Below are positions 3,486-57,965 of a stretch of 64,000 bases of DNA, one piece after another; the first letter of the stretch is position 1, and every line of letters begins with the position of its first letter. Both the position numbers and the translations under genes were made by a program. The notes beneath the pieces were generated by a model that saw nothing but the letters and a program-made list of their open reading frames with translations, had not been told where the DNA came from and did not search any database. Origin of the DNA: Hypanus sabinus (Eukaryota); NCBI RefSeq assembly GCF_030144855.1, contig NW_026780455.1, positions 1-64,000 on the forward strand. The letters run 5' to 3'.

Positions 3486-3657
3486 ATGGATCATAATCTT
3501 CAAAATACATCGCGCAATGCTGCGGCAATTGCGAAGAATTTTTTCTGGACGATTCAATTTATCATTGATGTGCTGGCGTGGGACTATGGAATTGCTGCGG
3601 CGCTTGTGACATTCCAAGACGTTTACTACCCTGTACTCGCCATTGTAGCTCTTCCTG
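3486..3657 (+). pseudogene. GPR139/GPR142-like GPCR copy 1, exon 1 (N-terminus + start of TM1)
   Basis: MDHNLQNTS...YYPVLAIVALP+G, then donor GTAAGT at 3658 (phase 1). Homologous to the three other exon-1 copies. Confidence 0.85.
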
Positions 3658-4356
3658 GTAAGTGTCTCGTCTCTTCCTCATGATGTTGTTGAAAAAATAT
3701 ATGTCAGCTTCTCTTTTATCCCCGTCCTCCCACAGCTCGCTAATTATAAGCCAGATCTTTCCAACTGGTATCGCTTTAGCAGACATGGTCTGAGTGTATT
3801 CGATACGGTACCCCATGCAAGGCAAATTGAGCACATGAGGAGCCATGCTATCCAAAGGGACTTTGCTTTGTGTCTCCAGAACTCGCTTCCCACTGAAGGC
3901 AAAGAGCGGATGCAGACGTGTCATATTCTGCAAGGAGCTCGGTGACCAGTAGTGACCTCAGTTATCATTGTGCTAACTTTACCCTTCCTGAGTTTTATAA
4001 AAAGGCCTGGATGAGGAAGTGGAGGGATGGTTCAGTAAATTTGCTGGTGACACAGAGGTTGAGCTTTTGTGCGTCGTGTGGAAGGCTGTCAGAGATTAGA
4101 GCGAGACATTGTTATGATGCAATACTGGGAGAGAATGTGGCTGATTAGAGTTCAACGAATCTTAGTCCAAAGTGGCTCAATTTGGTAGATCAAATATGAC
4201 GGCAGAAATATAGTATGAGTGGTTAAGACTCTTGGCAGTGTGGAGGATCAGAGGGTTTTGGCGGTCCGATTCCATAGGGCGTTCAAAACAGCTGCGCAGG
4301 GCGATTTTGTGAGTGAGAAGGAATATGGTGTATTGGCCGCTATTAATAGTTGAATT

Positions 4357-5638
4357 TGTTTTGAAGGATGAACAACCGCTTATGGGTAGAAGGGTACAGA
4401 ATTGCCCATATTTTTTCGCTTCCCTGGGAGAATTACAAACAGTTACTGTTGCAGTGCTGCTAATGAGAGAGAAAGGTATGAAACAAAAACATACTGGGAC
4501 TGGAACATTTGCTTCAGATAAGAGAGAGATAACACCGGGAGAGAGAGACTTGCTGTTCTACCATATTATGACTCCTGAAAGACTTATGGCTCCGGAGAGG
4601 GCTGTTTACTTGGTACCATTCTGTTCATTAAAATTCCTCAGTGGACATCCGGAGTGAGCTGGTTTGATGACTAAGCCATTCAAAAACCTGATTGACCCCT
4701 GAGACCCCGTGAGTATGGATAAAAGTGAAGACTGGGGAGACACCCCTCAGACACACCAGCAGACGCACCAGGATACAGACTAGTGAGCACTGCTTAAGTG
4801 TTGGAACCCACAAGAAAATTGTGGGGCATCGGAGGACCGAACTAAGGATCGGTCAATTTTAACTCACAGTGCTTATAGCGAGGCAAGAGGGGGCTTGTGT
4901 GTGTGTGTCCACCCTTGCCTGGGTGACGAGTCCACCATAGAAGAACGGTCTAGCTAAAGGCGAGAGGGATCATACTGATTGGCCACAACAACACATCGAC
5001 CGATCAAGAACGTAAAGGAAGGTTTGANNNNNNNNNNNNNNNNNNNNNNNNNNNNNNNNNNNNNNNNNNNNNNNNNNNNNNNNNNNNNNNNNNNNNNNNN
5101 NNNNNNNNNNNNNNNNNNNNNNNNNNNNNNNNNNNNNNNNNNNNNNNNNNNNNNNNNNNNNNNNNNNNNNNNNNNNNNNNNNNNNNNNNNNNNNNNNNNN
5201 NNNNNNNNNNNNNNNNNNNNNNNNNNNNNNNNNNNNNNNNNNNNNNNNNNNNNNNNNNNNNNNNNNNNNNNNNNNNNNNNNNNNNNNNNNNNNNNNNNNN
5301 NNNNNNNNNNNNNNNNNNNNNNNNNNNNNNNNNNNNNNNNNNNNNNNNNNNNNNNNNNNNNNNACATCGACCAGCAAATACCTAGGCCTGTATGAACTGA
5401 ACTGAACTTTATATTCACATATGAAAAATCATTATCCTCTAGACAACGATAGAGCTTGTTTATTGTTGATTATTATTATACCAACACTTTTGTGGGTAAC
5501 GTGTGTTATCTGTATATTTGCATTGTGGATATTGATTTGTATATTTTACTAATAAACATTGTTTTGAAAATAGTACCAGACTCAAACCGAATCCTTCTAT
5601 CTTTGCTGGAAAAACACCCAGTTACGGGCTACGTAACC
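4357..5638 (+). mobile_element. Solo LTR (Gypsy-like) with AATT target-site duplication; contains an assembly gap
   Basis: Starts TG and ends ...TACGTAACC. AATT at 4353-4356 and 5639-5642, AATAAA at 5551. Interrupts CR1 sequence. Confidence 0.6.
5028..5363. other. Assembly gap (N run)
   Basis: Run of N. Confidence 1.
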
Positions 5639-6479
5639 AATTGAATTAAGAGCCGAGAGGTAATGTTGCACCGATATTGGGCAATGATTTGGCCCTACGT
5701 GGAGTACTCTGCTCAGTTAAGGTTGCCTCACTTCAGGAAGGATGCAGAAACCGTAGTAAAGGTGCAGATGAAATTTGCAAAGATGTTGACTGGATGGGAT
5801 TGGGGAACTTGCCTTATGAAAACAGGTGAGTGAACACGGCCTATTCTCCTCGAAGCGACGAAGAATGAGAGGCGACCTGATAGAGGTGTATCAGATGATG
5901 AGAGATATGGATCGTGTGGATAGTCAGAGGTATTCTCCAAGTGCTGAAATGGTTTCCATAAGTGTGCACAGGTTTAACCTGCTGGTTTGCAGGTACAGAG
6001 GAGATTTTATGGGGAACTCACTCTTTTATGCAGAGAGTCGTGAGTGTGTTGAATGTTCTGCTGGCAAAAGTGGTGGAGAAGGATACGAGAGGGACTTTTA
6101 AAGAGACTTTTGGAGAGGTATTTGGAGGGTAGGAAAATAGAGGGCTGTGGGTAGTCCTAGTCATACCTAGGTTGGGACATGTTCGGCACAACTTGTGGGC
6201 CGAACGGCCTGCATTGTGCTGTTGGTTTTCTATGTTTCCAAATCGACAATCGTCACTTTCATTGCCGGATCATGCCAGTCTGAACAGATTGACTATTCCT
6301 GCTCCTATTGCTAATGAACATGCCACTCCCCAATATGCTCCTTTCCAACGAATATCAATGTCCAATCTCTCTCCGACTAGACAATCTCCAATCTATATCT
6401 CACTCACCATTTTGAGTTTCCAATCCGTCTGGCTCTCAAAAGACTAATTCTAACTGGCAAATTGATTTTAACCCAGATT

Positions 6480-7292
6480 GGTGTCAGGCAGTTGGAGTTT
6501 AACTCAGATAAATGTGAGGTGGTTAATTTTACTAGGTCAACTCTGAAGGCAGAATATAGTATTAATGGTAAGACTCGGCAGTGTGGAGGATCAGAGGGAT
6601 CTTGGAGTATGAGTCCACAGAACACTTAAAGCAGCTGCGCAGGTTGACTCTGTGGTTAAGAAGGCGTCCGGTGCATTGGCCTTCGTCAATCATGGGATTG
6701 CGTTTAGAAGCCGGGAGGTAATGTTCCAGATATATGGGACCCTGGTCAGACCCCACTTGGAATACTGTGCTCAGTTCTGGTCGCCTCACTACAGGATGGA
6801 CGTGGAGGCCATAGAAAGGGTGCAGAGGAGATTTGCACGGATGTTGCCTGGATTTGGGAACATGCCTTATGAAATCTGGTGGCGTGAACACGGCCTATTC
6901 TCCTCGAAGCGACGAAGGATGAGAGGCGACCTGATCGAGGTCTATCAGATGATGAGAGTTAAGGATCGTGTGGATCGTCAGAGGTTTTCGCCAAGTGCTG
7001 AAATGTCTGCCGTAAGAGGTCACAGGTATAACGTGTTGGGTTGCAGGTACAGAGGAGATGTCATGGGGAATTCGTTTAAGCAGAGAGTCCTGAGTGTGTT
7101 GAATGTTCTCCTGGCAACAGAGGTGGAAGCAAATACGAGAGGGTCTTTTAAGAGACTTCTGGAGAGGTACTTGAGCTTACAAAATATAGGGTTGTCGGTA
7201 AGCCTATCATTCCTAAGGTTGGGACATGTTCAACACAACTTTATGGGCCGAAGGTCCTGTATTGTGCTGTTGGTTTTCTATGTTTCTATGTT
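6480..7292 (+). mobile_element. CR1 LINE 3' fragment
   Basis: ORF 6652-7308: LVRPHLEYCAQFWSPHY..IERVQRRFARMLPG..RMRGDLIEVY. Tail ttctatgtttctatgtttct. Confidence 0.9.
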
Positions 7293-8053
7293 TCTAGATC
7301 CGCCATGATCACGTTCGTTGCCAAATCACGCCAATCCGAACAGATGGACGACTCCTGCTCCTATTGCTAATGCTCTTATGTTCTCATTGTTTCTCGTGTA
7401 TACCGTTGAGCGGACCTGGAATTATATCACTGTAATACATGGCATATTAATAAGTTTATTATTCTCTTAACACCTCCTCGTCTCAACTCCTTATTCTGAC
7501 GTCGAAGATCAGAATAATTCCAGGTATCCACTGATATCACTGATTAGTCCACAGGGTACGGCAGCTGAATTCAGCCATTCGAACACCGAGGCTTCTCCAT
7601 GATAGCTGATTTATCATCCCCCTGAACCACATTCTGCCGACCACTCCCAGTATCCATTGACACCCCGACGAATCAAGAGCCTGTCACTCTCCGCTGCAAA
7701 CAAACTGGCAGCCATAGCTGTCTGTGGCGAGAAATTCCACACATTTAGCAGCCTTCGAGTAACGAAATTGCTCCCCATCTCTGTTCCAACGAGATTGGTT
7801 TACTTTTGTGAAAACTCGTTCTCAGAAGCTACATATCCACGTCCATAATATCTCGGACGTTCAAAATTCGTTAGGTTTCACTGAGAATCCCCTCAATATA
7901 CTGAACTTCAGCGGGCATATTATACTCACTACCGAATTAGTAATGGGTCCCTTATTCATCTCTGTTCTCGGAAGTGTTGTCGATTAAAACAATAGTTTTT
8001 AAGGAATGTTTCATCAAAATATGTGTTAATGACCTTTATTTCTCTCCGCACAG

Positions 8054-8960
8054 TGAACGTGGTGACATTAGTCATCCTGTCGCGGGGAAAGTGCGGTCTC
8101 TCCAAAGGGGTCACAAGGTACCTGGTTGCCATGGTAGCTGCGGATCAGTTGGTCGTTTTCTTCGATTTGGTTTTGAGCAAGATTCCGATGACTCTCATTC
8201 CAGGAGAGGTTTTCCTCTGGTCCCGTCGTGTTCCTGTGTCCACGCCGTCGTGTTCTACGCCGCCACGGACTGTTCCGTCGCTTTCACCTTTGATCGATTT
8301 GTAGCCATTTGTTTTCAGAAGCTGAAACAAAAATACTGCACCGGGAGAGCGGCGGCTCTGGTTCTGGGGACAGTGACTCTGCTGAGCTGCTTAAAAAACA
8401 TGTTTTGGTACTTTTTTCTCGATGGGACATATTCGATATTCAGAACGTCCGTGTTGTGTTATAGCAGTAAACGCTTATTTTCCCCACCGAAGCTCGCAAC
8501 ATTTCTGATTATTCATTTCGTCTTCACCCCAATATTACCCTTTATCCTGATTCTGCTGCTAAACAGTTTAACCATCAGTCAGGTCTTAGTGGCCAGCCGA
8601 GCCCGGAGGAGACTCCGTGGTCTGCGCGATGGCGAGACGCCCGCCGATCCGGAGATGAAGAACCGCAGACAATCCCTCCTGTTACTGCTGGCGATGTCCG
8701 GGAATTTCATCCTGCTGTGGGCGCTGCTGACTGTGTCTTCCGTATGCGAGAGTCTCGGTGATTCCGTTCCCTTGACTCCCCCGAAATCTCTTCGGGATCT
8801 GGGCTACATGCTGCAACTGCTGAGCTGCTGCACCAACACGGCCCTTTACGCCGTGGTCCAGGCCAGGTTCAGGGTTCAGCTGCAGGAGACGGTGACATTT
8901 CCCTTCCGTCAAATGACAAATTTCACGCGTGGATGTCAGAGGAACATTAATCCTCAGTGA
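8054..8960 (+). pseudogene. GPR139-like GPCR copy 1, exon 2 (frameshifted)
   Basis: Acceptor cacAG|TG at 8053/8054, in phase with exon 1. 7-nt deletion at 8239/8240 (frameshift) and a 12-nt deletion at ~8279. DRF, NRRQS and CCTNTALY motifs; stop ends at 8960. Confidence 0.9.
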
Positions 8961-9559
8961 CGCCCCAAAATATCCTATTCCGTCAGTGGCATGTGCAGTT
9001 CCATTGGCGCTGTGGACGTCCCTGAATATCTCCCGCCCTCCACCCCTCGATGCACCAACAGGATCTGAGAGTATCCCCTTTCTACCTCCACACTGCTTGT
9101 TCCAGTTTACTTTCTTCACGAGTTCCCTGAAATGTCCCCCTCAGTACCACCAAGTGGGTTGTTCTAACCTTATTTGCATGCGAAGCTTTGCCATCACCAT
9201 CGCAATACGACAGTTGTGCCTTGCTTGTGTTCCGTGCAGACCGAATCCCAGTCTGGGTATGCCCGATGTAGCTCCATCTCTTTCATCTGTCGATGTCTAC
9301 TGGTTCAAACAGCCCCTGCATTTGAGCCGTTAAGGAAGACTTGTTACAGCGGTTTGAGCAAGGTCTTGGCCATGTTGACGGAGACGCTGTCAGGATTGAC
9401 TGCAGTACCGAAATGCGGTGAGTTTCTGGTGAAACAGAGGAGCATGCATAATACATGCATTCTAAAAACAAATAAATACTCAAATGACAAATTAGCACAA
9501 TCGTGGCAAAATGTAAAAACAAACGAGAAGGCATGTAACAAAGAAAGAAACTAGCGGGA

Positions 9560-10520
9560 AAACAGAGTATATGGCTGTTTTTCAGAAACTACAGAGAACA
9601 ACTAACAAAATCACTAGAAGGGAAAATATGAAATATGAAGCAAGACTGTGAAGAACATCAAGGTGGGTAGTGAAATCATTTTCAAGTATAGAAAAGTCAA
9701 ATAGAAATGAGAGTAGATATAGGACCGCTAGCAAATTAGGCAAGATAAATAAATTGAAAGCAAGGTCATGGCAGATGAACTAAATGAGTATTTGCAACAA
9801 TCATCACATTGGAAGACACTACCAGTTTGCCTGATGTTGCAGTGTGCGAAGGAACAGAAGTGGTGCGTTATTTTTCTTACAAGAGAGAAGTTGCTCAAAA
9901 AGCTGAAAGACCAAAGGGTACAAAATTCACCCGGAGCAGATAAACTCCACATTAGGGTTCTTAAAGAGTGAGCGGTAGAGATTGTGGATGCATTAGCAAT
10001 GAAATTTCTAAAGTCATTGGACTCTCGCATGGTGCCAGAGGACTGACAAATTGCAAATGCCGCTTCACCCTCTGGGAAGATAGCAGAAAGCGAATTATAT
10101 AACTGACAGCCTCATCTTAATGGTTAGGAAGAAGTGAGAAGAATGTTGTGAGATCGCATTTAAACATTTCTAATGTTGAAAAGCCTCGGCAGTGTGGGTG
10201 TGGAAAGTATGTTTCCCAAGGTTGCGGTGTCTAAGACAGGAGGACGTAGTCTCACAGACCAGAGGCGTCTTTTTAAAACATGGATGTGGAGAACTTCCTT
10301 TTTCTAGAGGGTGGTGAGCTTGGGGAATTTGTTTCCACGTTCAGCTGTGGAGGCCAGGTCATTCGGTGCATTTGAGGCAGAGATTTATAGAGTGTTGGCA
10401 TCAATCGTTACGGCGAGAAGACCAAAAATGGAAGTGAGAAAGTGAAATAGAGGATCAGCTATGACTCGATGGGCCAAATGGTCTAATTCTGCTCCGGTAT
10501 ATTATAGACTGATGGCTTTG
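9560..10520 (+). mobile_element. Degraded CR1 LINE fragments
   Basis: MADELNEY...SPGADKLHIRVLKE, a CR1 ORF2 linker motif, followed by a CR1 3' end. Confidence 0.7.
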
Positions 10521-10662
10521 TGGTCTTAAATCCGTGAGAGTTACGGGCATTATTTTTATCTGTTTTTGTTTAGGCTCTGAGCCATGCTGATTAGTGGGAA
10601 TGCCTATTATCAACAGGGAACTGATTGAAACGATGTAGAGAGAAAACATGCATTGTTGCTTT

Positions 10663-10762
10663 CAAGTCCGAATGAATGGTCTTGGCCCGAAACATCGAGC
10701 GCTTATTCATTTCCAGAGACGCTGTCTAACCTGCTGAGCTCCTCCAGCAATCTGTGCGTGAT
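10663..10762 (+). repeat. Penelope-type terminal repeat with degenerate hammerhead motif
   Basis: gtccgaatgaatggtcttggcccgaaacatcga...gctgtctaacctgctgagctcctccagca, similar to the terminus of the element at 13172-13270. Confidence 0.5.
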
Positions 10763-11029
10763 TCCGTTCTAAGTGCAAAATTCAATGCACTGTGTTTATC
10801 AAAATTATGTAATGTCCTGCTTTATATTTTTACTCTTATGTTTTACGTATTTCTTTCTGCAGTCTGTTCTACCGGCAACCTGCTTGCATTACTGTTGAAG
10901 TTAAGGAATGCGTGCGATCCAATTAGTATGGTCGAATTTGGGGCAGCTTTTCTTGTTGAAGGACAATAAGGTCGGTCTAGGTTTTGTTTTTGGTTCCTCT
11001 CAATGATAGGGCATTACTCAATACGCTAC

Positions 11030-12960: not shown

Positions 12961-13171
12961 CTCAACGAGATTGGATTGATTTTTGCATAGTAGAGGACTT
13001 AAGAGTTATCGGGAAAAGACAACAAGGTAGATGTAATCTCTTTCCAGCTGCAGCAATTCAAAACCATCTCTGCTCTATGAAGTGCTATCGATTAACATAA
13101 TTGTTCAGAGAATACTTCCATCCAAATGTGTGTTAATGGTCTTTATTTCCCCCACAGTGAACATGGTGACA

Positions 13172-14349
13172 TCAAGAAGTACAAAAAAACTGGATTAACT
13201 CAGGAGGCAGGGCAGCATCCGTTGAAAGAAGCGGTCAACGTGTCGGGTCGAAACCCTTCGTCAGGACTAAAGAAGGAGGGGATAGGGGCCCGATAAAGAA
13301 GGTGGGGAGGTTGTGCAAAACCGATCAGAGGAAAGATCAAAGGGTGGGGGAGGTGGAGAAGGAATCATTATTGGTAGTAGCAGAACGCATAGTCATGAGA
13401 GGTGAAAGGCAGAAAGTAGAGGTGGGATGGGGAAGGGAGATTAAGTGTATTACTAGAAGTTGGAGAATTCTATGTTCATACCAAGGGACTGGAGACTACA
13501 CAGACGGTATATGAGATGTTGTTCCTCCAACCGGAGTTTTGCCTCATCATCACAGTAGAGGAGGCCATGTGTGGACATATCTGAATGGGAATGAGAGGGA
13601 GAGCTGAAGTGAGTGGCAACCGGGACATCCTGTCTGTTGTGGCGGACGGAGCGTAGGTGCTCGACGAAGCGGTCCCCCAATCTGTGTCGGGTCTCGCCGA
13701 TGGAGAGGAGGCCACACCGGGAGCACCGGATGCAATAGATCACCTCAACAGACTCACAAGTGAAGTGTCGCCTCACCTGGAAGGACTGTTTGGGGCCCTG
13801 AATGCTGGTAAGACATGAAGTGTAGGGACAGGTGTGGCACTTACGCTTGCAGGGATAAGTGCCAAGACGGAGAACTGTGGGGAGGGCAGTGTGGACCAGG
13901 CAGTCAAGGAGGGAGCGATCACTGCGAATAGCAAAGAGGGGTAGAGAGGGAAATACATCATTAATGGTGGGGTCCTGTTGAAGTTGTCGGAAGTTGCGGA
14001 GGATATTATGCAGGATCCGGAGGCTCATGTAGTAGCGGAGGGCTTTGAGTCCTTCTGGATGGGGAATTGAAGTGTATAAGGATTGGACATCCATTGTGAA
14101 AGTGACAGGGCATCTGGAAGTTATTGAAGTGTTGGAGGGCATGTGATGATACCCGGAAGTAAGTAGGGACGGAATGGAGTCGAGGTAGGCAGATACATGT
14201 TCGGTGGGACAGGAGCAGGCTGAAACTATAGGCCTACCAGGACAGTCCGCCTTATGGATCCTGGGGAGGAGCTAAAAGCGAGCAGTGCGGGATATGGGAA
14301 TTATGAGTTTTTTGGCTGAGGATGAAATGTCTCCGGAGTTGATACTCTT
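13172..14349 (-). mobile_element. Penelope-like retroelement (internally deleted RT + GIY-YIG endonuclease) with 14-bp TSD
   Basis: ORF 13453-14142: TMDVQSLYTSIPH (PLE RT) and VIYCIRCSRCGLLSIGET..RLGDRFVEH (GIY-YIG). TGAACATGGTGACA at both 13158-13171 and 14350-14363. Confidence 0.9.
13234..13267 (-). ncRNA. Minimal hammerhead ribozyme motif (type I, PLE-associated; A14>C variant)
   Basis: Minus strand reads GTC-CTGACGA-A-GGGT TTCG ACCC-GACA-CGTT-GAC: CUGANGA core, UUCG-capped stem II, GAAA mutated to GACA, stem I GTC/GAC. Confidence 0.6.
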
Positions 14350-16559
14350 TGAACATGGTGACAATCGTCAGCCTGTCGCGGGGAAAGTGCGGTCTCTCCA
14401 AAGGCGTCAAAAGGTACCTGGTTGACATCGCAGCAGCGGATCAGCTCGTCGTTCTCTTCAAACTGCTATTGGGCATGATTCTGATGACTTACATGCCAGT
14501 TGAGCTTTTACTCTGGTCGTTACGTGTTTCCATCTGTAATATCCACGCTGTCCTGCTCTTCGCCAACACGAACTGTTCTGTCTGGTTCACAGTCACTTTC
14601 ACCTTTAATCGATTTGTCGCCATTTGTTTTCAGAAGCTGAAACGAAAATACTGCACCGGGAGAGCGGCGGCACTGGTTCTGGAGACAGTGATTCTGCTGA
14701 GCTAACTGCAGAATATTTTCTGGTATTTTTTGCTCCATGGGACAGATACGTTGATAATGTCCACCGAGGTGTGTATGCGTCATTTTAGTTTATTCCCGAT
14801 CACAGAGACAACATTTCTAATGATTCCTTCCTTCCTTACTCCAATATTCCCATTTGTCCTCATTCTGCTGCTCAACCGTTTAACCATCAGACACGTCTTC
14901 GTGGCCAGCCGAGTCCGGAGGAATCTCCGTGGTTCGCGCGATGGCGAGTATCCCGCGGACCCGGAGATGAATAACCGCAGGCAATCTCTTCTGTTACTGC
15001 TGGTGATGTCGGGAAATTTCATCCTGCTCTGGGCGCTGCTGACGGTGTGTTCCGTATGGGAAAGCCTGTTTTTTAATGTCGGCTCCATTCCCCCGAATTC
15101 TCTGCTGGAGCTGGGCTACGCGCTGCAACCGCCGAGTTGCTGCACCCTTTACGCCGTGGTCCAGGCCAGGTTCGGGGCGCAGCTGAAGGAGGCGGTGAAA
15201 TCGCCCTTCAGTCTCATGTCAAAGCTTATTCGGCGTTGTCGGGACATCCTTCTTCCTCAGTGACCTGTCTTCCATACCGCCCCAAAATATTCCATTCCTT
15301 CACATCCATTGAGGCTCTGAACTGCCGTGGTTAGCTCCTGCCCTGCACCCTCGATACACTGACAAGTTCGGCGATATCTCCCCAGTCTGCTTTCAGCATT
15401 GCTCCTTCCAGTTTCGTTTCGCCTCTAGTTCCCTATAATGTCTCCCACAGTTGTACCAATTGGGTGATTCGCACTTTCTTTGCATGCCAAACCTTGCCAT
15501 CAAAATCTCAATGCGGAGTTGGAACCTGAGAGATTTCCATGCGGCCCTAATGGCTGCGCGGAATCCCGCAGTATCGCTCAATCTCTTTCCTCCGGCGATG
15601 GTCTAGTGGCTTCAAGATCTGCTGCCATTAATCGGTGCAGGCGGGTCCCTTGCCAAAGACTGACCGGGAACTCCGCTCTCGACTTTGATCTTTGGAGATC
15701 TGTCTGGCTGCCACCGCGAGAACATGTCATTACCTCGCAGTGGAAAAACCACTCATCCCATCGCCGCTCGTTCTTCCCAAGCAGGAATTGCCGTCCCAGA
15801 GCGTTTGGGAAATTAAAAAAAAAATCATGGACACTCAGTGCAGTGGAGGTCCAAACTGTCGATCTGGATTGAGTACTTTGGGTCTGTGGGGAAGGTGACT
15901 GCTGAGGAAAGGGCACCTGAACTTTTTGTATTTATTGAGATTCGGCACGAAATGTGAGATACTGTCAGATGTATGGCTCGAGCATAAACACGTTCGATTC
16001 GTTTGGATACATCAGAGCTTTTCCCCACTGACCCTTCAGGAACAGTGCATTGCGCTGGAGCATTCCAGTTGAGTTGCTGATTGGATCGTATCCTTTCCGA
16101 AACTTCGACAAACATCTTTGTTCGGTTTCCGAGAGTCTGTCATGTTTTTCCTTCTCTGTTTGATCATCCGGTGTTCTCCTCATTTCCCGCCGCTCTCTGT
16201 GACGGCCTAGGTTGCCTCCAACAGTTCAAATGCTAATACATTTATGTTGATAGCTTAATGGGTCACTGAAAATTGTCCCATGATTCGGGCTAGGGGAACG
16301 TGAAACATTTGCCAGTCATGGAAACGGACTGGAATTAAGGCATTTGAGAAGGACACGACCCGGGAGGCTTATCCATAAGACCGAGTTGCAGGAGAGAGCA
16401 TGAAATTTAATTTGCTCCGGCAATAGAGGGCGGAAAGCAGTGGTTGAGAGCAGCGATTCTGCATGTGACAAGTGCTGGAGATGTTCTGACGTTTGACTTG
16501 GATGAAAATAGGCATGATTCATTAATATGCTTGTGGACGACACAAAACGTGATGGCGAA

Positions 16560-23068: not shown

Positions 23069-23249
23069 ATGGATCATAACCTGCGAAATGCATCGCGGAA
23101 TGCGGCGGGAATGGTGAAAAATAATTTCTGGTTTTTTCAATATCTTGTTGAAAATTATGAGAGGCTGTCGTTGAATTCTCGAATCATGTATGCTCTTTGG
23201 ACCATCCAACTGATTTACTATCCTCTACTCGCCATTGTAGCTGTTCCTG
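23069..23249 (+). CDS. GPR139/GPR142-like class A GPCR copy 3 (intact), exon 1
   Basis: gcaATGG start; MDHNLRNAS...YYPLLAIVAVP+G; donor GTTAGT at 23250, phase 1. Confidence 0.85.
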
Positions 23250-23974
23250 GTTAGTGTCTCGTCTAGTCCTCTTGATTATCGTTTAAAATGTGTCAGCTTC
23301 CCTTTCATACCTGTCCTCTAACGACGCGTTAATTGCATAGCTTCTTACTCAAACCGATATTGCTTTCTCAATCTTCGGCCGAGTGTATTTGATAAGGTAA
23401 CCTATACAAAGCTTACAGAGCAAGTAAAAAGTCACGTGCTGCAAGGGAACATTGCTTTAAAAGTCTGGAAATGCCTGTAGAATGCTGTTATATAACCACA
23501 GTTTGAACATGGGACAGTGGGATAATATAATAGTCCAGTGAGTGTGATGATGTACTGGTCTTGTGAGTGGGATGCTGTAACTGTCTCTTGACCGTGGGCG
23601 GATGTTTGTCACTTGATGGCATGTTCCAAGCCGTATTTAAACCAACCCGCGTTTTATGACGCTGCTCTCATTTCATTTTGAAGCAACATTGTTGCTGGTG
23701 GTCAGTGGTGTGAGGTTCCACCGGTGTTGCTTGTTGCACGTTTATTATTCCCTTAAAATCCAGAATCACAGAGTGAAGGTATTGCCGGAGTTACCCGAGT
23801 ACAAAGGATTGGAGAAAGTTAATGTCGTTTTGCGTTTTCGGGAATGATAGTCCTTTGACTTCGTTCAGGAATTGTGGCATGCGTATTCGAGTTAAACCCC
23901 TGCAAGGTCGGGAAGTTTTGTGCAGTGCCCACCCTCCAGTCAAAAGGTCATTTCTATTTATTTCCTCGTGAAAC

Positions 23975-24771: not shown

Positions 24772-24918
24772 NNNNNNNNNNNNNNNNNNNNNNNNNNNNN
24801 NNNNNNNNNNNNNNNNNNNNNNNNNNNNNNNNNNNNNNNNNNNNNNNNNNNNNNNNNNNNNNNNNNNNNNNNNNNNNNNNNNNNNNNNNNNNNNNNNNNN
24901 NNNNNNNNNNNNNNNNNN
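24772..24918. other. Assembly gap (N run)
   Basis: Run of N. Confidence 1.
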
Positions 24919-27661: not shown

Positions 27662-28584
27662 TTAACGTGGTGACAATCGCCATCCTGTCACGGGGAAAGT
27701 GCGGTCTCTCCAAAGGCGTCACGAGGTACTTGGTTGCCATGGTAGCAGCGGATCAGCTAGTCGTTGTCTTCGATCTGGTATTGAGCAAGATTCTGATGAG
27801 TTACATGCTGACTGAGGTTTTCGTCTGGTCGTTTCGTGTTCCCGTGTGTAATATCCACGCTGTCGTGTTTTACGTCGCCACGGACTGTTCTGTCTGGATC
27901 ACCGTCACTTTCACCTTTGATCGATTTGTCTCTATTTGTTCTCCGGAGCTGAAACGAAAATACTGCACCGGGAGAGCGGCGGCTCTGGTTCTGGCGACAG
28001 TGACTGTGCTGAGCTGCGTAAAGAACATTTTCTGGTATTTTTTGCTCCATGGGAAATATTCGATGCAAGTTTCGTCCTTGCTCTGTTTTAGTTCTTATCG
28101 TTTTTCCCTATCTCTGGAGACAACATTTATTGTGATTCATTTCTTACTCACACCAATATTCCCCTTTGTCCTCATTCTGCTGCTCAACAGTTTAACCGTC
28201 AGACACGTCTTAGTAGCCAGCCGAGCCCGGAGGAGACTCCGTGGTTCGCGCGATGGTGAGACGCCCGCCGACCCGGAGATGAAGAACCGCAGGCAATCCC
28301 TCCTGTTACTGCTGGTGATGTCGGGGAATTTCATCCTGCTTTGGGCGCTGCTGACGGTGTATTCCGTGTGGGATATGTTGCTATTTTACATTAACTTGAA
28401 ACCCCCGACTTCCCTGCGGGAGCTGGGCTACATGCTGCAATTGCTGAGCTGCTGCACGAACACGGCCCTGTACGCCGTGGTCCAGACCAGGTTCAGGGTG
28501 CAGCTGAAGGAGACGGTAAAATCTCCTTTCAGTCTCATTGCAAAGTTCACTCGGCGTTGTCTTGACCCCATTAAACCTCGATGA
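27662..28584 (+). CDS. GPR139/GPR142-like class A GPCR copy 3 (intact), exon 2; spliced product 367 aa
   Basis: Acceptor cacAG|TT at 27661/27662 completes a GTT codon. Open frame with TM1-TM7: MVAADQL, CNIH, SVWITVTFTFDRFVSIC, ECL2 Cys, TPIFPF, LLWAL, NTALY. 181+923=1104 nt. Confidence 0.9.
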
Positions 28585-36873: not shown

Positions 36874-37758
36874 TCACTGAAAATTCATGCGGCACTGACA
36901 ACAGCGAGTCATCTTTGCTATGAGACATAGGGGCGATTTCACCGTCTCCTTCAGCTGCACCCTGAACGTGGTCGGGACCACGGCGTAAAGGGCCGTATTG
37001 GTGCAGCAGCTCAGCAGTTGCAGCATGTCGACCAGCTCCCGCAGAGAATTTGGAAGTATCACGTGAATGTAAACAAACAGGCTATCCCATACGGAATACA
37101 CCGTCTGCAGCGCACACAGCAGGATGAAATTCCCTGACTTCACCAGCAGTAACAGGACAGATTGCCTGCGGTTATTCATCTCCGGGTCTGCGGGCGTCTC
37201 GCCATCGCGCGAAAAAAGGAGTCTCCTCCGGGCTCAGCTGGCCACTAAGACGTGTCTCATGGTTAAACTGTTGAGCAGCAGAATGCTGACAAAGCGGAAT
37301 ATTGGGGTGAGGAGGGAATGGATCACAATAAAAGTTGTCTATAGAAATCGGGAATATCTATAAGAACTGAAACAGAGCAAGGATGAAGCTACAATCGAAT
37401 ATGTTCCATGGAGCAAAAAGTACCAAAAAATGTTCTTTACGCAGCTCAGCAGAGTCACTGTCCCCAGAACCAGAGCCGCCGCTTTCCCGGTGCAGAACTT
37501 TCGTTTCAACTTCGGAAAACAAATGGCGACAAATCGATCAAAGGTGAAAGTGATGGTGAACAAGACAGAACAGTCCGTGGCGGCGTAGAACACGACGGCG
37601 TGGATATTACAGACGGGAACACGAAACGACCAGAGGAAAACCTCCGATGGCATGTAACTCATCGGAACCTTGCTCAATACCAGATCGAAGAGAACGACCA
37701 GCTGATCCGCTGTTACCATGGCAACCAGGTACCTTGGGACGCCTTGGGAGAGACCGCA
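36874..37758 (-). pseudogene. GPR139-like GPCR copy 4, exon 2 remnant
   Basis: A ~69-nt deletion removes the acceptor and first ~13 codons (ccaagg-c-TGCGGT). In-frame TAG at 37339-37341; the frame continues to the stop at 36874. Confidence 0.9.
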
Positions 37759-40712: not shown

Positions 40713-40893
40713 CAGGAACAGCTACAATGGCGAGTAGAGGGTAGTAAGTCACTTGGAAGGTCCAAAGAGCATACTCGATTCGAGAATCCAACGTCATCCA
40801 TTCATAATTTTCAACAAGATTTTGAAACGGCCCGAAAATATTCTTCGCGATTCCCGCAGAATTCCGCGAAGCATTTTGCAGATTATGATCCAT
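40713..40893 (-). pseudogene. GPR139-like GPCR copy 4, exon 1
   Basis: MDHNLQNAS...YYPLLAIVAVP+G, donor GTAAGC at 40712. Confidence 0.85.
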
Positions 40894-47640: not shown

Positions 47641-47769
47641 ACAAATTTCTGAGATAGGAGAGTCCCTTGGGCCTGATGATATCTGCGCAGATACTGAGGG
47701 AGACAGAAGAAGAATCAGCTTGCTCCTGTCTTGCCCTCTGTTACCTGAACCTTAAAAATTGAATCGAAA

Positions 47770-50700: not shown

Positions 50701-51710
50701 AAGGTAAAGAGTGGTTGTAGACTGGTAATATACTGCGTGGAGGTCGGTCACCAGTTGTGTGCCTCAGTGATCTGTGCTGACACCCTTACACTTCGTCATT
50801 TTTATAAATATCCGGTTTCGGGAACAGGAAGGATGGGTTGGTAAATTTTCTTATCACACAATGGTTGGAGTTGTTGTGCGGAGGGCGGAGTGCTGTCACA
50901 GGTGACTGCGGGACATTGATAGGATGGAAAGCTTGGCAGAGAAATAGCAGATTGAATTCAATCCAGGTACGTGTGAAGTGATTGATTTTGGTAGGTCGGA
51001 TATAATGGCAGAATATACTACTAATGGTAAGACACTTGCGGTCCGAATCCATAGGACGCTCAAAGCAGCTGCACAGGTTGACTCTGTGGTTAAGAAGGAA
51101 TACGGCACTTTCGCCTTCATCAATCGTGGGATTGTGTTGAAGAACGGAGAGGCAATGTTGCAGCTTTTGGACCCTGGTCAGACCCCACTTGTAGTACTGT
51201 GCTCAGATCTGGTCGCTTCACTAAAGGAATGATGTGCAAACTATAGAAAGGGTGTAGAGCAAATTTACAAGTATGCTGCCTGGATTGGGGGCATTCCTAA
51301 CGGGAATAGTCCTTTGCTCGTTGGAGCGATGGAGGATGAGTGGTGACCTCATAGAGCTGAATACGATGAAGAGAGGCTTTGATCATGTGGATAGTCAGAG
51401 GCTTTATCCCAAGGTTGAAATGGCTATAACGAGAGGACACTTCTTTACGCTGTCGGAAGCAGGTACAGAGAAGATGTCAGTTTATGTTTTCCACGCAGAG
51501 ATTGGTGAGTTTGTGGAATGGGCTGCCAGTAACGGTGGTGAAGGCGGATACGATAGGGTCTTTTAAGGGACTCTTGGATAGGCACATGGATCTAAATAAA
51601 TAGAGGCCTATCGATAACACGAGATAATTTATAAAGCAAGTAGTTGCTCGGTACTGCCGTGTGTTCCGAATTTCTTGTAATGTGTTGTAGATTTTCTATG
51701 TTTATGTAAT
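47770..51710 (+). mobile_element. Near full-length degenerate CR1 LINE
   Basis: ORF1 remnants (47800-48650), endonuclease ILIGDF, RT RPVSLT..QHGIVKGRSCLTSLIEFFE, 3' tail ttctatg at ~51695. Confidence 0.85.
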
Positions 51711-54645: not shown

Positions 54646-55571
54646 TCACTGAGGATTAATGCTCGTGTGAAAACACCGAGCGAGCTTTGTCATTAGACGG
54701 AACGGGGATTTCACCGATTCTTTGAACTGCAGCCTAAACCTGGTCTGGGCCACGGCGTAAAGGGCCGTGTTGGTGCAGCAGCTCAGCTGTTGAAACATGT
54801 AGCCCAGTTCCACCAGAGAGGTCGGGGGATATGTTTCAAAATAAATATACAGGGTATACCATATGGAATACAGCGTCAGTAGCGCCCACAGCAGGATGAA
54901 ATTCCCCGACATCTACAGCAGTATCAGAAGGGATTGCCTGCGGTTGTTCATCTCCGGGTCGGCGGGCGACTGAACGTCACGAGAACCACGGAGTCTCCTC
55001 CGGGCTCGGCTGGCCAGTAAGACGTGTCTGATGGTTAAACTGTTGAGCACGAGAATCAGGACAAAGGGTATTATTGGGGTGGGGAGGACACGAATCGCTT
55101 GCAATGCTAACGACGGAAAATCGGAAAAGAAGCGGCGACTTTCCAGGCAGAGCAAGGGCATATTTGAAATCGAATAAAAACCATCGAGCGTAAAGTACAA
55201 GAAAATGTTCTTTAGGCAGCTCAGCAGAGTGACTGTCCCCAAAACCTGTGCCGCCGCTCTCCCGGTGCAGTAATTTAGTTTCAGCTGCGGAAAACAAATG
55301 GCCACACATCGATCAAAGGTGAAAGCGACGGTGAACCAGACAGAACAGTCTGTGGCAGCGTAGAGTATGACGGCGTGAATATTACACACTGGAACACGAT
55401 AACTCCAGTGTAGAACCTCAAATGGCATGTAGATCATCGGAATCTTGCTCAATACCAGATCGAAGAAAACGACCAGCTGATCCGCTGCTACCATGGCAAC
55501 CAGGTACCTTGTGACGCCTTTGGAGATACCGCACTTTCCACGCGACAGAATGACGATTGTCACCACGTTCA
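54646..55571 (-). pseudogene. GPR139-like GPCR copy 5, exon 2 (single in-frame TAG in TM6)
   Basis: Acceptor cacAG|TG at 55572/55571. Frame is open except for TAG at 54913-54915 (..LLILL*MSGNF..). DRC at the DRF position; stop at 54646. Confidence 0.9.
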
Positions 55572-57237
55572 CTGTGCGGAGGGAAGTCAAGATATTTAAA
55601 ACACATTCGGAATGAAATTTTCTCTGAAATCAACAATTTTAATCGACAGCATTTTCAAGAGCAGAGTTGGACTTGGAATCGATATAACTACTAAGGAGAA
55701 AATCGGAATCATTATTAAATGGGTAGTGACTATAATGTACCTGAGAAGTTCATGAGAATGACGGGAATCTTATTGAAACCTATTCAATATTGTAAGGACG
55801 ACATATCGTGGACGTGGAGAGCTGCAGCAGTGTTGGATTTACAATAGAAACCCATCACCTCAGAACAGATGTGGTTAGAAATTTGTTTCGACCGTGGCTG
55901 GTGAATACGCGGAATTCCTCGCCACAGACGGCTATGGGAGTCAGTTCGTTGGAATCATTTGTAGCAGAGAGTGATAGGCACTCGATTCGTCGAAGCCTCA
56001 ATGGATATAGAGAGTGGGCGCCAGAATGTGGTTGAGATGGATAATAAATCAGCTATGATGGAATGGCGGAGAAGCCTCCGTGCTCGAATCACGGAATTCA
56101 ACTCCCGAATCATATGGGACAAGCATTGATATCAGTGGATAGCTGGAATGTGTTCTGACCTTCGCCGGCAGGAGAAGGGGCTGAAAATGGAATGCGATAA
56201 TGAACTGATTACTGATTAAGTCCTGTATCACGGTGCCAGAAATTCAACTTCCTTCAACAGTAAACAGGAGAAAAAACTTAGAGCAGAAGAGGTAATGAAA
56301 TAGTAGCCAAAATAGTTCATCTGTTCGGACTGGCATGCACCGCCATTGAAGATAATCATTGCTGAGCTGACCATGGACATTTATTCAACTGCCTGCATTT
56401 TCCCCCAAAGCCCGTAATAGCCCTACTACGGATAAAATCAATCCAAACTTTTGTAAAATATATTTACTGAGGTAATGTCCACTTCTTCATTGGGCAGAGA
56501 ATTCCACAGATTCACCAGCCTCTGTGAAAAGCAGTTCCTCCAAATCTCCGTCCTAAATTCACTCCCACAAGCTTCAGCCTATGCCCCCTAGTTCTAGGCT
56601 CACCGACAAGTGGAAACAACTTTCCTGGCCCTGTTGTATCTATCTTTTCGTATTTTTTACATGTTGCTGAAATATCATTTCTGGTTCTTCTGAATTCCAG
56701 TGCGTGCAGTCGCAGGCGACAACATCTCTCCTGATAGTCTCGCCTCCTCTTGTCTGGAATCAAAATGGGGAAACGACTTCAAGGCCAGTAAAATCCTCCC
56801 CAAGTCACCGTACCAGACTTGCACGCAGTACTACAGCTGCCGCCTCACAAGTACCACGCGCATTTGCAGCATAATCAACTAACACTTAAATTCACGTCTG
56901 TAGCAATGAAGACCAATATCCCATCTGCCTCCTCGTTAGACTGCGACTGTTGCAAACAAACCTCTTTTGGTTGAAGAACAAACACTCTAAAGTGACTCCA
57001 CGTGGCAGTATACTGCAATCGTTTACCACTTAATAAAATTGTGTTCTTCAATTGGTCCTCTTCCATGGTAGATAACCTCGCTTTCATCAACATTTTCCTC
57101 CGTTCGACTAGACGCTAATACTTTCGCTTAAATAATTCCACTCCAATATTTGTGTAGGCGGTAGATCGTGGCAATAATGGTGGCCACGTGACCTCCTTCT
57201 TTTTCACAGCTGGGGCTTTGAGGTATTTATTTATATA

Positions 57238-57264
57238 TTCATTCATTCAAGCACTTATCCATTC

Positions 57265-57307
<43 letters not shown>

Positions 57308-57327
57308 TATTCATTCATTCATTCATT
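57238..57327. repeat. (TTCA)n/(TCAA)n compound microsatellite
   Basis: tcaatcaatcaa... flanked by ttcattca runs. Confidence 0.9.
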
Positions 57328-57784
57328 CTGGCGATGAAGTCCCCTCCAGCAGGGTTCGGGATAGCTGAATTATCCTACCATTTCCCAAATGGACTGTGGA
57401 ACATAAATCACTGGAAGCATGTCTATGCTTCACAGTGGTTGCAGATATAATTTGTCAGACTACTGCCTAGATTGGAGGCCATTTACTCTGAGGAGAGTTT
57501 GTGAGAGCTAGATCCTGCTTCTCAGGGAGTGAAGGTGCATGTGAGGTCACTTGCTGGCAGTGTTTGAGAGGTGAAGAGGCAAAGGTAACGTTTGCCTGAC
57601 GGAGAAGTAACCCGGACGCCGACAACCCCAAAGCTGGAGAGAGAAATCCTGTAATGCAATTAGCCGATGTTTGCTAAAGCGGTACCGGTTTGAGAGACGG
57701 GCCATGCAATGAGACGACAGGCATTAAAGAGAAGCTGAAATTCACTCTTCAACGTTAATCAGGAGGAAGGAGCCAAGCACTTAC

Positions 57785-57965
57785 CAGGAACAGCTACAAT
57801 GGCGAGGACAGGGTAGTAAATTACTTGGATGGTCAAAATCACATAAGTGACACGAAAATCCAACGGCAGCGTTTCATAATATAAAGAAAGAGATTCATAG
57901 GGCCAGAAAATATTCTTCTGAATTCCCGCAGCATTCCGTGATATATTTTGCAGATTACGATCCAT
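57785..57965 (-). pseudogene. GPR139-like GPCR copy 5, exon 1
   Basis: MDRNLQNIS...YYPVLAIVAVP+G, donor GTAAGT at 57784. Confidence 0.85.

What the first reader, a model, noticed from the sequence alone, without database searches (positions are those of the whole stretch)
3486..57965. Birth-and-death cluster of GPR139-like receptors: candidate uncharacterised chemoreceptor family
Seen: five paralogous two-exon 7TM genes in 55 kb, one intact and four independently broken, in both orientations. Established: GPR139 and GPR142 are single-copy, conserved aromatic-amino-acid-sensing GPCRs in mammals. As I recall, GPR139 has a phase-1 intron at the equivalent TM1 site (..GLP/AN..). Inference: tandem expansion, high pseudogene load and extracellular hypervariability mirror OR/TAAR/V1R/T2R repertoires. 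This may be a lineage-expanded sensory (amino-acid or peptide detecting) or immune-surveillance receptor family.
Basis: partly seen in the sequence, partly recalled or inferred. Interest (0 to 1): 0.85.

Follow-up and report, generated by a model that had tools for sequence, protein, structure and literature searches.

The report
Stingray cluster of GPR139-related receptor genes
This stretch of stingray DNA holds one working and four dead copies of a receptor gene from a very large, unstudied family found only in sharks and rays; the copies vary on the ligand-facing side and stay constant on the signalling side, which fits a sensing repertoire, but nothing yet shows where the genes are expressed.

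Summary
The window carries five paralogues of a class A GPCR gene: three on the + strand and two on the - strand. Copy C is intact (367 aa, two exons, phase-1 intron in TM1). Copies A, B, D and E are each broken by different lesions. Both assembly gaps lie inside introns, and their flanks are collinear with the gap-free copy D.

The family is very large and, in everything sampled, confined to sharks and rays: 1219 clusters at 90% identity, and every named member is an elasmobranch. My tree places it as sister to a single-copy gene of amphibians and sturgeon. The next group out is a single-copy gnathostome gene that lies beside TMEM183A. Human GPR139 is the closest solved receptor (81 bits against 57 for the next), but identity is only about 20%. 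These genes are therefore GPR139-related, not GPR139 or GPR142 orthologues. I could not obtain true GPR139/142 sequences for the tree.

Across the family the extracellular side varies (2.24 bits) while the intracellular side is fixed (0.99 bits). The deep aromatic pocket of GPR139 is kept, but its polar ligand contacts are replaced.

A chemosensory-type role is the best guess, and it remains untested because no tissue-labelled RNA was available. I found no paper on this expansion. The scan had already noted the same family on other pieces of this genome.

The parts
3486..3657 (+). Copy A exon 1 (ATG to phase-1 donor CTG|GTAAGT); two in-frame deletions (9 nt in total) relative to copy C
5028..5363 (.). 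Assembly gap inside the intron of copy A (3658-8053); not in coding sequence
8054..8960 (+). Copy A exon 2, pseudogene: good acceptor (CACAG|TG), 7-nt deletion at about 8239 causing a frameshift, 12-nt in-frame deletion in TM3
13064..13171 (+). Copy B: last ~95 nt of the intron, the acceptor AG, and the first 14 nt of exon 2 (left copy of the target-site duplication TGAACATGGTGACA). No homology to the other copies further upstream and no exon 1
13172..14349 (-). About 1.18-kb inserted element splitting copy B exon 2, flanked by a perfect 14-bp direct repeat (13158-13171 and 14350-14363). Carries a 229-aa ORF on the - strand.
14350..15263 (+). Copy B, rest of exon 2, pseudogene: TAA stop at 14703-14705, 9-nt deletion removing NTA of NTxxY, D3.49N; 7 mismatches at family-invariant positions
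23069..23249 (+). Copy C exon 1 (N-terminus with an N-x-S sequon, and most of TM1); donor G|GTTAGT, phase 1
24772..24918 (.). Assembly gap inside the intron of copy C, within a ~1.8-kb repeat insertion that copy D lacks. Flanks are collinear with D
27662..28584 (+). Copy C exon 2. With exon 1 it gives an intact 367-aa receptor that keeps 68 of 69 family-invariant positions
36874..37758 (-). Copy D exon 2 remnant, pseudogene: ~70-nt deletion removed the acceptor and the first 13 codons; TAG at 37341-37339; TGA at 37236-37234; W6.48C; P5.50R
40713..40893 (-). Copy D exon 1, open, with a good donor (CTG|GTAAGC)
54646..55571 (-). Copy E exon 2, pseudogene by a single TAG at 54915-54913. The 95%-identical Hypanus sabinus protein P0006 has Leu at that position
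57785..57965 (-). Copy E exon 1, open, with a good donor (CTG|GTAAGT)

Best explanation
The window holds a small birth-and-death cluster of an orphan class A GPCR family that has expanded enormously in sharks and rays.

Shown:
- A segment of about 9-10 kb (upstream region, exon 1, a 2-4.4 kb intron, exon 2) was duplicated repeatedly, in both orientations.
- One copy (C) remains a complete 367-aa seven-helix receptor.
- Four copies decayed through different lesions.
- The family is co-orthologous to a single-copy gene of amphibians and sturgeon. It belongs to the wider GPR139 / protostome W/F-amide-receptor group without being GPR139 or GPR142.

Inferred mechanism:
- Every intact member couples to the same intracellular partner. 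This rests on the near-invariant ICL1 motif SRGKCGLSK, the DRF motif, ICL2, the DPEM..RRKS motif at the start of TM6, and NTxxY.
- Members differ in the outer pocket and extracellular loops, so each binds a different ligand.
- The deep aromatic sub-pocket inherited from the GPR139 lineage is kept (Y/F3.33, H5.43, W6.48). GPR139's polar contacts (R6.51, N7.38, E3.32) are replaced by hydrophobic or aromatic residues. This points to ligands with an aromatic or hydrophobic moiety rather than free amino acids.

Most likely role (inference, untested): a repertoire that samples many external or peptide ligands, that is, a chemosensory-type receptor family in animals whose OR, TAAR and V1R repertoires are tiny.
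For: - Five copies, their lesions and splice sites.
- Pfam 7tm_1 match at 69.9 bits.
- AlphaFold model of the full-length sibling P0006: pLDDT 90.4, seven helices plus H8.
- Copy C keeps 68 of 69 positions that are at least 90% conserved in 120 family members. At those positions A has 2 mismatches plus 4 deleted, D has 8 plus 6 deleted, B has 7 mismatches and E has 5.
- Family size and range: 1219 clusters at 90% identity with E<=1e-3; 95 clusters at 50% identity with E<=1e-30. All 30 representatives whose names I looked up are elasmobranchs, from sharks and batoids alike.
- Careful maximum-likelihood tree: S+E 98/89, S 100/100, L 100/100, E monophyletic 83/60. Several E subclades contain both sharks and rays.
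- Family profile against PDB sequences: GPR139 scores 80.9 bits, the next receptor 57.1.
- Same intron site and phase in a skate member and in a teleost L-clade gene.
- Column entropy 2.24 bits on the extracellular side against 0.99 bits on the intracellular side, p=1.6e-19. Among the five window copies, 70% of extracellular-side positions vary against 49% of intracellular-side positions.
- Pocket residue frequencies: with the GPR139 mutagenesis positions taken from PMC5430874.
- Small OR/TAAR/ORA repertoires in the catshark: PMC11979771.
Against: - No expression evidence. RNA runs carrying the species label of the best DNA holders show no coverage of copy C's exons, and tissue labels are hidden.
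- PMC11979771 reports no GPCR among the 50 most specific genes of its catshark 'brain & olfactory epithelium' library.
- An extracellular side that varies more than the intracellular side is seen in any paralogous GPCR family with different ligands, so it is not specific to chemoreceptors.
- Pairwise dN/dS among the copies is 0.46-1.0 with no region clearly above 1.
- 80% of the genes in this window are dead.
- True GPR139/142 sequences could not be placed in the tree.
- Monophyly of the elasmobranch clade has only moderate support (83/60).
Confidence: 0.45

Rival explanations
1. Internal peptide or neuromodulator receptors. The family keeps the ancestral job of the GPR139 / MIP / FMRFamide-receptor group, binding endogenous peptides with aromatic C-termini in brain or endocrine tissue, and merely has many paralogues.
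For: GPR139 is the nearest solved receptor. The deep aromatic pocket is kept. The ESM Atlas neighbours include 'FMRFamide receptor-like' clusters. PMC8557429 places GPR139/142 as sister to protostome W/F-amide receptors. The sister S and L genes are conserved single-copy genes, as expected of endocrine receptors.
Against: Hundreds of paralogues, a high pseudogene load and rapid turnover of ligand-facing residues are unlike any known endogenous peptide receptor system. A matching diversity of endogenous ligands would be needed.
Confidence: 0.2
2. Immune-surveillance receptors. The repertoire detects pathogen- or damage-derived peptides on leukocytes or at barrier tissues, as formyl-peptide or chemokine-type receptors do.
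For: Structural neighbours include chemerin, C5a, formyl-peptide and chemokine receptors. First-stage notes on other windows of this genome report family arrays abutting T-cell-receptor V segments (unchecked). Birth-and-death evolution is also typical of immune gene families.
Against: Structural matches are generic for class A peptide-type GPCRs, and by sequence GPR139 is clearly the best hit. This window contains no V segments or convincing recombination signal sequences. There are no expression data.
Confidence: 0.15
3. A largely neutral expansion. Segmental duplication in a repeat-rich, slowly evolving genome multiplied a dispensable GPCR gene. Most copies are dead or dying, and the few intact ones have no diversified function.
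For: Four of the five copies here are pseudogenes. The cluster is embedded in retroelement debris. dN/dS is 0.46-1.0. dS of 0.2-0.35 shows that old pseudogenes persist. The annotated protein P0007 probably derives from a broken locus.
Against: Copy C and most annotated members keep about 69 near-invariant positions, including all signalling motifs, across lineages that split before the shark-ray divergence. That requires long-term purifying selection on many copies. Variation is strongly non-random in space.
Confidence: 0.15

Closest known systems
Human GPR139 (PDB 7VUG, 9M42) and its paralogue GPR142
   Same: - Best solved match to the family profile, by 24 bits.
- Top AFDB Swiss-Prot match.
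- Shared TM1 motif YYxxL..G.P.N..T..ILS and shared AAAD in TM2.
- No proline at 7.50 in either (NFFLY in GPR139, NTxxY here).
- Aromatic 3.33, H5.43 and W6.48 of the deep pocket are kept.
   Different: - Only about 20% identity.
- GPR139 and GPR142 are single-copy genes; this family has hundreds to thousands of members.
- R6.51, N7.38 and E3.32 of GPR139 are replaced.
- The family has its own ICL1 (SRGKCGLSK) and DPEM motifs.
- GPR142 did not appear among the top 30 structural matches.
S clade: single-copy 'probable GPR139' gene of amphibians and sturgeon (e.g. P0231 Pleurodeles, P0405 Xenopus, P0421 Acipenser)
   Same: - Sister group of the elasmobranch family (98/89).
- Shares FTFDR(F/Y)V, the D/E-PEM..RR(K/R)SI motif before TM6, and an ICL1 motif ending in LSK.
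   Different: One copy per genome, about 70% conserved across amphibians, against a huge and divergent repertoire in elasmobranchs. Identity to copy C is 31-33%.
L clade: single-copy gnathostome 'GPR139-like' gene, annotated beside or fused with TMEM183A. It is possibly one of the GPR210A/B subtypes of PMC6504862; that mapping was not checked
   Same: - Same phase-1 intron at GxP|xN in TM1.
- ICL1 motif C.LSK.
- Also hits GPR139 best (70 bits against 44).
- Present in sharks too (P0305, P0306, P0311).
   Different: Has ERF instead of DRF and lacks the DPEM motif. It is conserved, single-copy and spread across bony vertebrates. It is a separate clade (100/100).
Vertebrate chemoreceptor repertoires that arose from ordinary class A receptors (TAARs from aminergic receptors; vomeronasal FPRs)
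   Same: Lineage-specific tandem expansion, many pseudogenes, a conserved transducer face with a variable ligand face, and origin from a single-copy non-sensory-type ancestor.
   Different: Not homologous to OR, TAAR, V1R or T2R subfamilies. The coding region has two exons. Sensory expression has not been shown.
Protostome MIP / proctolin / myosuppressin / FMRFamide-type-1 receptors
   Same: Reported sister group of deuterostome GPR139/142 (PMC8557429). Annelid and brachiopod proteins were the nearest non-vertebrate hits and served as the outgroup. The Drosophila sex-peptide (MIP) receptor is among the top structural hits.
   Different: Identity of 27-32%. Those receptors bind defined neuropeptides and are not hyper-expanded.

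Membership tests
Class A (rhodopsin-type) GPCR, Pfam PF00001 | Significant match to 7tm_1 above the gathering score | tested here: met
   Copy C scores 69.9 bits against a cutoff of 30.5
Class A (rhodopsin-type) GPCR, Pfam PF00001 | Seven transmembrane helices plus helix 8 | tested here: met
   AlphaFold model of sibling P0006, pLDDT 90.4, pTM 0.87, with TM1-7 and H8. Top structural matches are all class A receptors
Class A (rhodopsin-type) GPCR, Pfam PF00001 | Microswitch residues D2.50, D/E-R-Y/F 3.49-3.51, W6.48, N7.49, P7.50, Y7.53 | tested here: inconclusive
   D2.50 99%, DR 100%, F3.51 92%, W6.48 98%, N7.49 99% and Y7.53 98% in the family, and all present in copy C. However, 7.50 is Thr (95%), not Pro; GPR139 also lacks Pro there
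GPR139/GPR142 orthologue group | Falls inside the GPR139/142 clade in a phylogeny | not testable with these tools
   No referenced GPR139/142 sequence could be obtained, because the searches were filled by closer clades. Indirect evidence: GPR139 is the best solved hit (81 bits against 57), but the S and L clades are closer to the family
GPR139/GPR142 orthologue group | Single-copy, highly conserved gene | tested here: not met
   1219 clusters at 90% identity; members are 34-78% identical to copy C; five copies in this window alone
GPR139/GPR142 orthologue group | Ligand-contact residues F3.33, H5.43, W6.48, N7.38 and R6.51 (PMC5430874) | tested here: not met
   Y/F3.33 75%, H5.43 66% and W6.48 98% are kept. 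6.51 is F/L/Y (no Arg among the six commonest residues, about 90% of sequences) and 7.38 is F/Y (79%, no Asn among the six commonest). Copy C reads Y, H, W, L, Y
   The same site and phase are found in copies A, C and E (D keeps the exon-1 donor only; its acceptor is deleted), in a skate member (L002) and in a teleost L-clade gene (L001). GPR139 protein aligns GLP|AN there. The GPR139 gene itself was not examined
Birth-and-death chemosensory receptor repertoire (OR/TAAR/V1R/T2R type) | Large lineage-specific copy number in tandem clusters with many pseudogenes | tested here: met
   Four of the five copies here are dead. Other clusters in the same genome were noted by the scan
Birth-and-death chemosensory receptor repertoire (OR/TAAR/V1R/T2R type) | Variation concentrated at ligand-facing positions, with a conserved transducer face | tested here: met
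   Entropy 2.24 against 0.99 bits, p=1.6e-19. ICL1 is at 0.40 bits and ECL3 at 2.85 bits
Birth-and-death chemosensory receptor repertoire (OR/TAAR/V1R/T2R type) | Expression in sensory cells, typically one or a few receptors per cell | not testable with these tools
   RNA runs are few, small and without tissue labels. Copy C is not covered. One spliced-looking paralogue contig was seen in another organism's run
Birth-and-death chemosensory receptor repertoire (OR/TAAR/V1R/T2R type) | Sequence membership in a known chemoreceptor family | tested here: not met
   For copy C, Pfam gives only 7tm_1; copies A and D add weak, sub-threshold Srx hits. Nearest relatives are GPR139-type and peptide receptors

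The most novel reading that the evidence does not exclude
Sharks and rays possess a previously unrecognised chemoreceptor family of hundreds of genes. It arose from a single GPR139-superfamily gene that still exists in one copy in amphibians and sturgeon. It would supply the odorant or tastant receptor diversity that their tiny OR, TAAR and V1R repertoires lack.
Probability: 0.3. Interest if true: 0.9.

Novelty: new variant of a known kind. Interest (0 to 1): 0.7.

Why it matters
Elasmobranchs are known for an acute chemical sense, yet they have only a handful of OR, TAAR and ORA genes (PMC11979771). A class A receptor family with more than a thousand distinct sequences across sharks and rays has not been described in any paper I could find. 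It shows birth-and-death dynamics, a fixed signalling face and a variable ligand face.

If the family is sensory, it would be a new vertebrate chemoreceptor family. It would also be a second example, after the TAARs, of an ordinary receptor lineage recruited for sensing. If it is not sensory, it is still the largest known expansion in the GPR139 superfamily, and its single-copy relatives in amphibians and sturgeon offer a route to deorphanisation.

The question is directly testable with existing catshark, skate and stingray tissues.

Tried and rejected
1. Placing genuine GPR139/GPR142 in the tree. All three database searches returned closer clades (E, L, S), so no referenced GPR139/142 sequence was available.

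2. Expression. Two run searches and two read-laying runs gave no coverage of copy C's exons in RNA runs carrying the species label of the best DNA holders. Tissue labels were hidden, and the DNA runs gave only 40-80-nt unitigs. This could neither confirm nor contradict the stop codon in copy E, and no alternative letter was reported there.

3. Copy B as a processed retrocopy. Homology seemed to begin exactly at the exon-2 boundary, which suggested retroposition. I rejected this: about 95 nt of intron, the acceptor and the first 14 nt of exon 2 lie 1.18 kb upstream, separated by an insertion with a 14-bp target-site duplication.

4. Penelope class of that insertion. Pfam found no GIY-YIG or RT domain, even at E<=10.

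5. Structure search as a classifier. Foldseek ranks GPR139 first in Swiss-Prot but ninth in PDB, with near-equal scores for many peptide receptors, so it does not discriminate.

6. T-cell-receptor V segments in this window, as reported for neighbouring windows. None were found; there is one lone RSS-like match.

7. DNA of the P0006 locus, to decide between allele and paralogue.

8. Supplementary tables of the catshark sensory paper. None are held.

Full report
**What is in the window.** A tblastn search with the long open frame at 27601-28584 finds five copies of the same exon, with E values from 1e-111 to 0. They are A 8054-8960 (+), B 14349-15263 (+), C 27662-28584 (+), D 37758-36874 (-) and E 55571-54646 (-). 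A 60-codon first exon lies 2.2-4.4 kb upstream of four of them: A 3486-3657, C 23069-23249, D 40893-40713 and E 57965-57785. It starts MD(H/R)NL and ends ...AVP plus one base.

Donors are CTG|GT(A/T)AG. Acceptors are CACAG|T(G/T)AAC in A, C and E. Copy C therefore splices in phase 1 into a 1101-nt, 367-codon open frame.

Nucleotide self-comparison shows a duplicated unit of about 9-10 kb that includes the upstream region, the intron and the downstream flank. The copies therefore arose by DNA-level segmental duplication, not retroposition. The space between them is filled with LINE-type reverse-transcriptase fragments and other repeats.

**The gaps.** Gap 5028-5363 lies in the intron of copy A (3658-8053). 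Gap 24772-24918 lies in the intron of copy C (23250-27661). No reading frame crosses a gap. The sequence to the left and right of each gap aligns in the same order and orientation with the other copies. In copy C the gap sits inside a ~1.8-kb repeat insertion (about 23415-25246) that the gap-free copy D lacks, and D matches C on both sides of it. The pairing of exon 1 with exon 2 across the gaps is therefore supported by collinearity, though the true gap lengths stay unknown.

**The lesions.** Each dead copy is broken differently.

- Copy A has a 7-nt deletion at about 8239 (frameshift) and a 12-nt in-frame deletion in TM3.
- Copy B retains only about 95 nt of intron, the acceptor and the first 14 nt of exon 2 (13064-13171). 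A 1.18-kb element follows, flanked by a perfect 14-bp direct repeat (13158-13171 and 14350-14363). The rest of exon 2 carries a TAA stop at 14703-14705, a 9-nt deletion that removes part of NTxxY, and D3.49N. No exon 1 exists upstream. The insertion had been flagged by a first-stage note on this window (s1-188211), and I verified the duplication. Its Penelope assignment is not supported by Pfam.
- Copy D lost about 70 nt spanning the polypyrimidine tract, the acceptor and the first 13 codons of exon 2. It also has a TAG at 37341-37339 and a TGA at 37236-37234, plus W6.48C and P5.50R.
- Copy E has a single TAG at 54915-54913.

Against the 69 positions that are at least 90% conserved in 120 family members, copy C differs at one, and that difference is shared by all five copies. 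A differs at 2 (plus 4 deleted), E at 5, B at 7 and D at 8 (plus 6 deleted). 'One intact, four independently broken' is correct. The only amendment is that B is an exon-2 remnant, not a two-exon gene.

**What the protein is.** Copy C matches Pfam 7tm_1 at 69.9 bits. An AlphaFold model of the full-length sibling P0006, built on a 120-sequence family alignment, is confident (pLDDT 90.4, pTM 0.87). It shows seven helices, a beta-hairpin in ECL2 and a long helix 8. Structural neighbours are class A peptide-type receptors in general. GPR139 ranks first in Swiss-Prot and ninth in PDB, with near-equal scores for many others, so fold does not classify it.

Sequence does classify it. The single sequence hits GPR139 best (39.6 bits against 33.8). 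The family profile hits GPR139 at 80.9 bits, against 57.1 for the next receptor. The alignment shares the TM1 motif YY..L..G.P.N..T..ILS, AAAD in TM2, S.W.TV....DR in TM3, and an NxxxY motif without proline in TM7.

**How big the family is and where it occurs.** The search of the 90%-identity protein collection returned 1219 proteins with E<=1e-3. The top 120 all come from sharks and rays and are named 'probable G-protein coupled receptor 139'. The best is 78% identical (Mobula), and most are 55-60% identical. An exhaustive search of 50%-identity representatives found 95 clusters at E<=1e-30 and 147 at E<=1e-10.

I looked up names for 30 representatives. The 20 in the 34-49% identity range are all elasmobranchs: Scyliorhinus, Mustelus, Stegostoma, Chiloscyllium, Rhincodon, Heptranchias, Heterodontus, Pristiophorus, Mobula, Leucoraja and Hypanus. 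The 10 at 27-33% identity are not: they are bony vertebrates (coelacanth, salamanders, a frog, a teleost), invertebrates and unnamed sequences. No chimaera sequence turned up, but absence was not tested.

**Its place in evolution.** Two further searches defined the neighbouring groups.

The L clade is a conserved, essentially single-copy gene. It occurs in frogs, caecilians, salamanders, turtles, squamates, crocodile, sturgeon, bichir, bowfin, teleosts, coelacanth and sharks, and several annotations fuse it with TMEM183A. The S clade is a single-copy gene of amphibians (about 70% identical among them) and sturgeon. Its next-best hits are the elasmobranch genes, at 32-33%.

I built a careful maximum-likelihood tree of 73 sequences, rooted on annelid and brachiopod relatives. 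It gives L 100/100, S 100/100, S plus the elasmobranch genes 98/89, and the elasmobranch genes monophyletic at 83/60 (84% of bootstrap trees). S and the elasmobranch family share FTFDR(F/Y)V and a D/E-PEM..RR(K/R)SI motif before TM6, both of which L lacks.

Inside the elasmobranch clade, several subclades contain both sharks and rays. The expansion therefore began before that split.

The same phase-1 intron at GxP|xN occurs in a skate member (L002) and in a teleost L gene (L001). GPR139 reads GLP|AN at the aligned site. I did not examine the GPR139 gene itself.

I could not place true GPR139/142 in the tree. The literature puts GPR139/142 as sister to protostome MIP/proctolin/FMRFamide-type receptors (PMC8557429). 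It also notes extra GPR139/142-like subtypes ('GPR210A/B') in coelacanth, gar and fishes (PMC6504862).

The fair label is 'GPR139-superfamily, co-orthologous to the amphibian/sturgeon S gene'. It is not a GPR139 or GPR142 orthologue.

**The window's copies within the family.** All five fall in one well-supported clade with Mobula and Hypanus sequences (100/100). C and D are each other's closest relatives (99/91). E branches first. Mobula sequences sit among A, B and C/D.

Pairwise dS is 0.21-0.35 and dN/dS is 0.46-1.0. The duplications are therefore old, and the pseudogenes are long-lived.

Copy E is 95.4% identical to the annotated Hypanus sabinus protein P0006, which has Leu at E's stop. Copy B is 91.4% identical to P0007. 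The P0006 gene lies on a 248-kb contig of GCA_030144855.1 and spans 3328 bp, against 3320 bp for copy E. An earlier follow-up of this scan names the genome as Atlantic stingray. I did not verify that independently. Whether P0006 and P0007 are paralogues from a block duplication or copies on a divergent haplotype is open. P0007 starts at the Met inside the 14-bp duplication, so it is probably a model built on a locus that carries the same insertion.

**How it probably works.** Column entropy over the 120-sequence alignment was mapped onto the model's helices. The extracellular loops and the outer thirds of the helices average 2.24 bits. The intracellular loops and inner thirds average 0.99 bits (Mann-Whitney p=1.6e-19). 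ICL1 is at 0.40 bits, TM3-inner at 0.46, ECL3 at 2.85 and TM1-outer at 2.91. Among the five window copies, 70% of extracellular-side positions vary, against 49% on the intracellular side.

At the positions where GPR139 mutagenesis located the ligand (PMC5430874), the family keeps the deep aromatic sub-pocket: Y/F3.33 75%, H5.43 66%, W6.48 98%. It has replaced the polar contacts: 6.51 is F/L/Y rather than Arg, 7.38 is F/Y rather than Asn, and 3.32 is Leu rather than Glu.

I infer a common transducer-coupling face with many different ligand specificities, and ligands that carry a hydrophobic or aromatic group rather than free amino acids bound in the GPR139 manner. This pattern fits a sensing repertoire. 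It would also arise in any diversified receptor family.

**Function.** No tool result bears on tissue. RNA runs carrying the species label of the best DNA holders cover only repeats in copy C's intron, not its exons. One run from another organism holds contigs about 90% like exon 2. Their upstream sequence reads ...ATT CCA A|TG AAC..., which is an exon 1-exon 2 junction without the intronic AG. This hints that some family members are transcribed and spliced.

DNA runs show far higher k-mer depth over the conserved parts of exon 2 than over the variable parts, and runs from many organism labels share 31-mers with it. This fits a high copy number and slow evolution, but depth is not a copy count.

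The catshark sensory paper reports tiny OR, TAAR and ORA repertoires. It also reports no GPCR among the top 50 genes specific to its 'brain & olfactory epithelium' library (PMC11979771). Full-text searches pairing GPR139 or 'coupled receptor 139' with shark, skate, ray or elasmobranch terms found nothing on this expansion.

**Verdict.** The sensory or immune reading remains a reasonable but untested hypothesis.

The same family had already been noted by this scan on several other pieces of the same genome, once with a follow-up that reached a similar conclusion.

Noticed in passing
window 13158-14363: A ~1.18-kb element is inserted 14 nt into exon 2 of copy B, with a perfect 14-bp target-site duplication (TGAACATGGTGACA). 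Its 229-aa ORF on the - strand has no significant Pfam domain, so the 'Penelope' label from a first-stage note is unconfirmed.
   Followed up: yes
P0007 (Hypanus sabinus annotated protein) against window 14350-15263: The annotated 305-aa protein starts at the Met inside the 14-bp duplicated target site and lacks TM1. The sibling locus therefore probably carries the same insertion, and the model may describe a pseudogene.
   Followed up: partly
window, exon 2 of all five copies: Synonymous divergence is higher in codons for the extracellular side (dS 0.30-0.57) than in the rest (0.13-0.29). This could reflect gene conversion in the conserved half, or constraint on synonymous sites.
   Followed up: no
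window 23870-24840 and 25228-25809 (intron of copy C): Repeat sequences here have very high depth in RNA-run contigs from several organisms, so they are transcribed transposable elements. Assembly gap 24772-24918 overlaps the end of the first block.
   Followed up: no
window 27662-27700, run X1: Contigs from an RNA-type run of another organism continue upstream of exon 2 with ...ATTCCAA|TGAAC... rather than an intronic AG. This looks like a spliced paralogue transcript.
   Followed up: partly
window 54700-55600 (copy E exon 2): In DNA runs, summed unitig depth is thousands over the conserved exon-2 segments and tens to hundreds over the variable segments and exon 1. Runs from more than a dozen organism labels share 31-mers with this exon.
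   Followed up: no
window 50270-50707 and 60671-61246 (+): Reverse-transcriptase fragments (Pfam RVT_1) from non-LTR retrotransposons lie between and beyond the receptor copies. Blocks at 9886-12560 upstream of copy B match other repeats in the window.
   Followed up: partly
L001 (teleost Logan contig) 7910-9008: The L-clade GPR139-like gene has the same phase-1 intron, but the intron is only about 100 nt long, against 2.2-5.2 kb in the ray and skate genes.
   Followed up: yes
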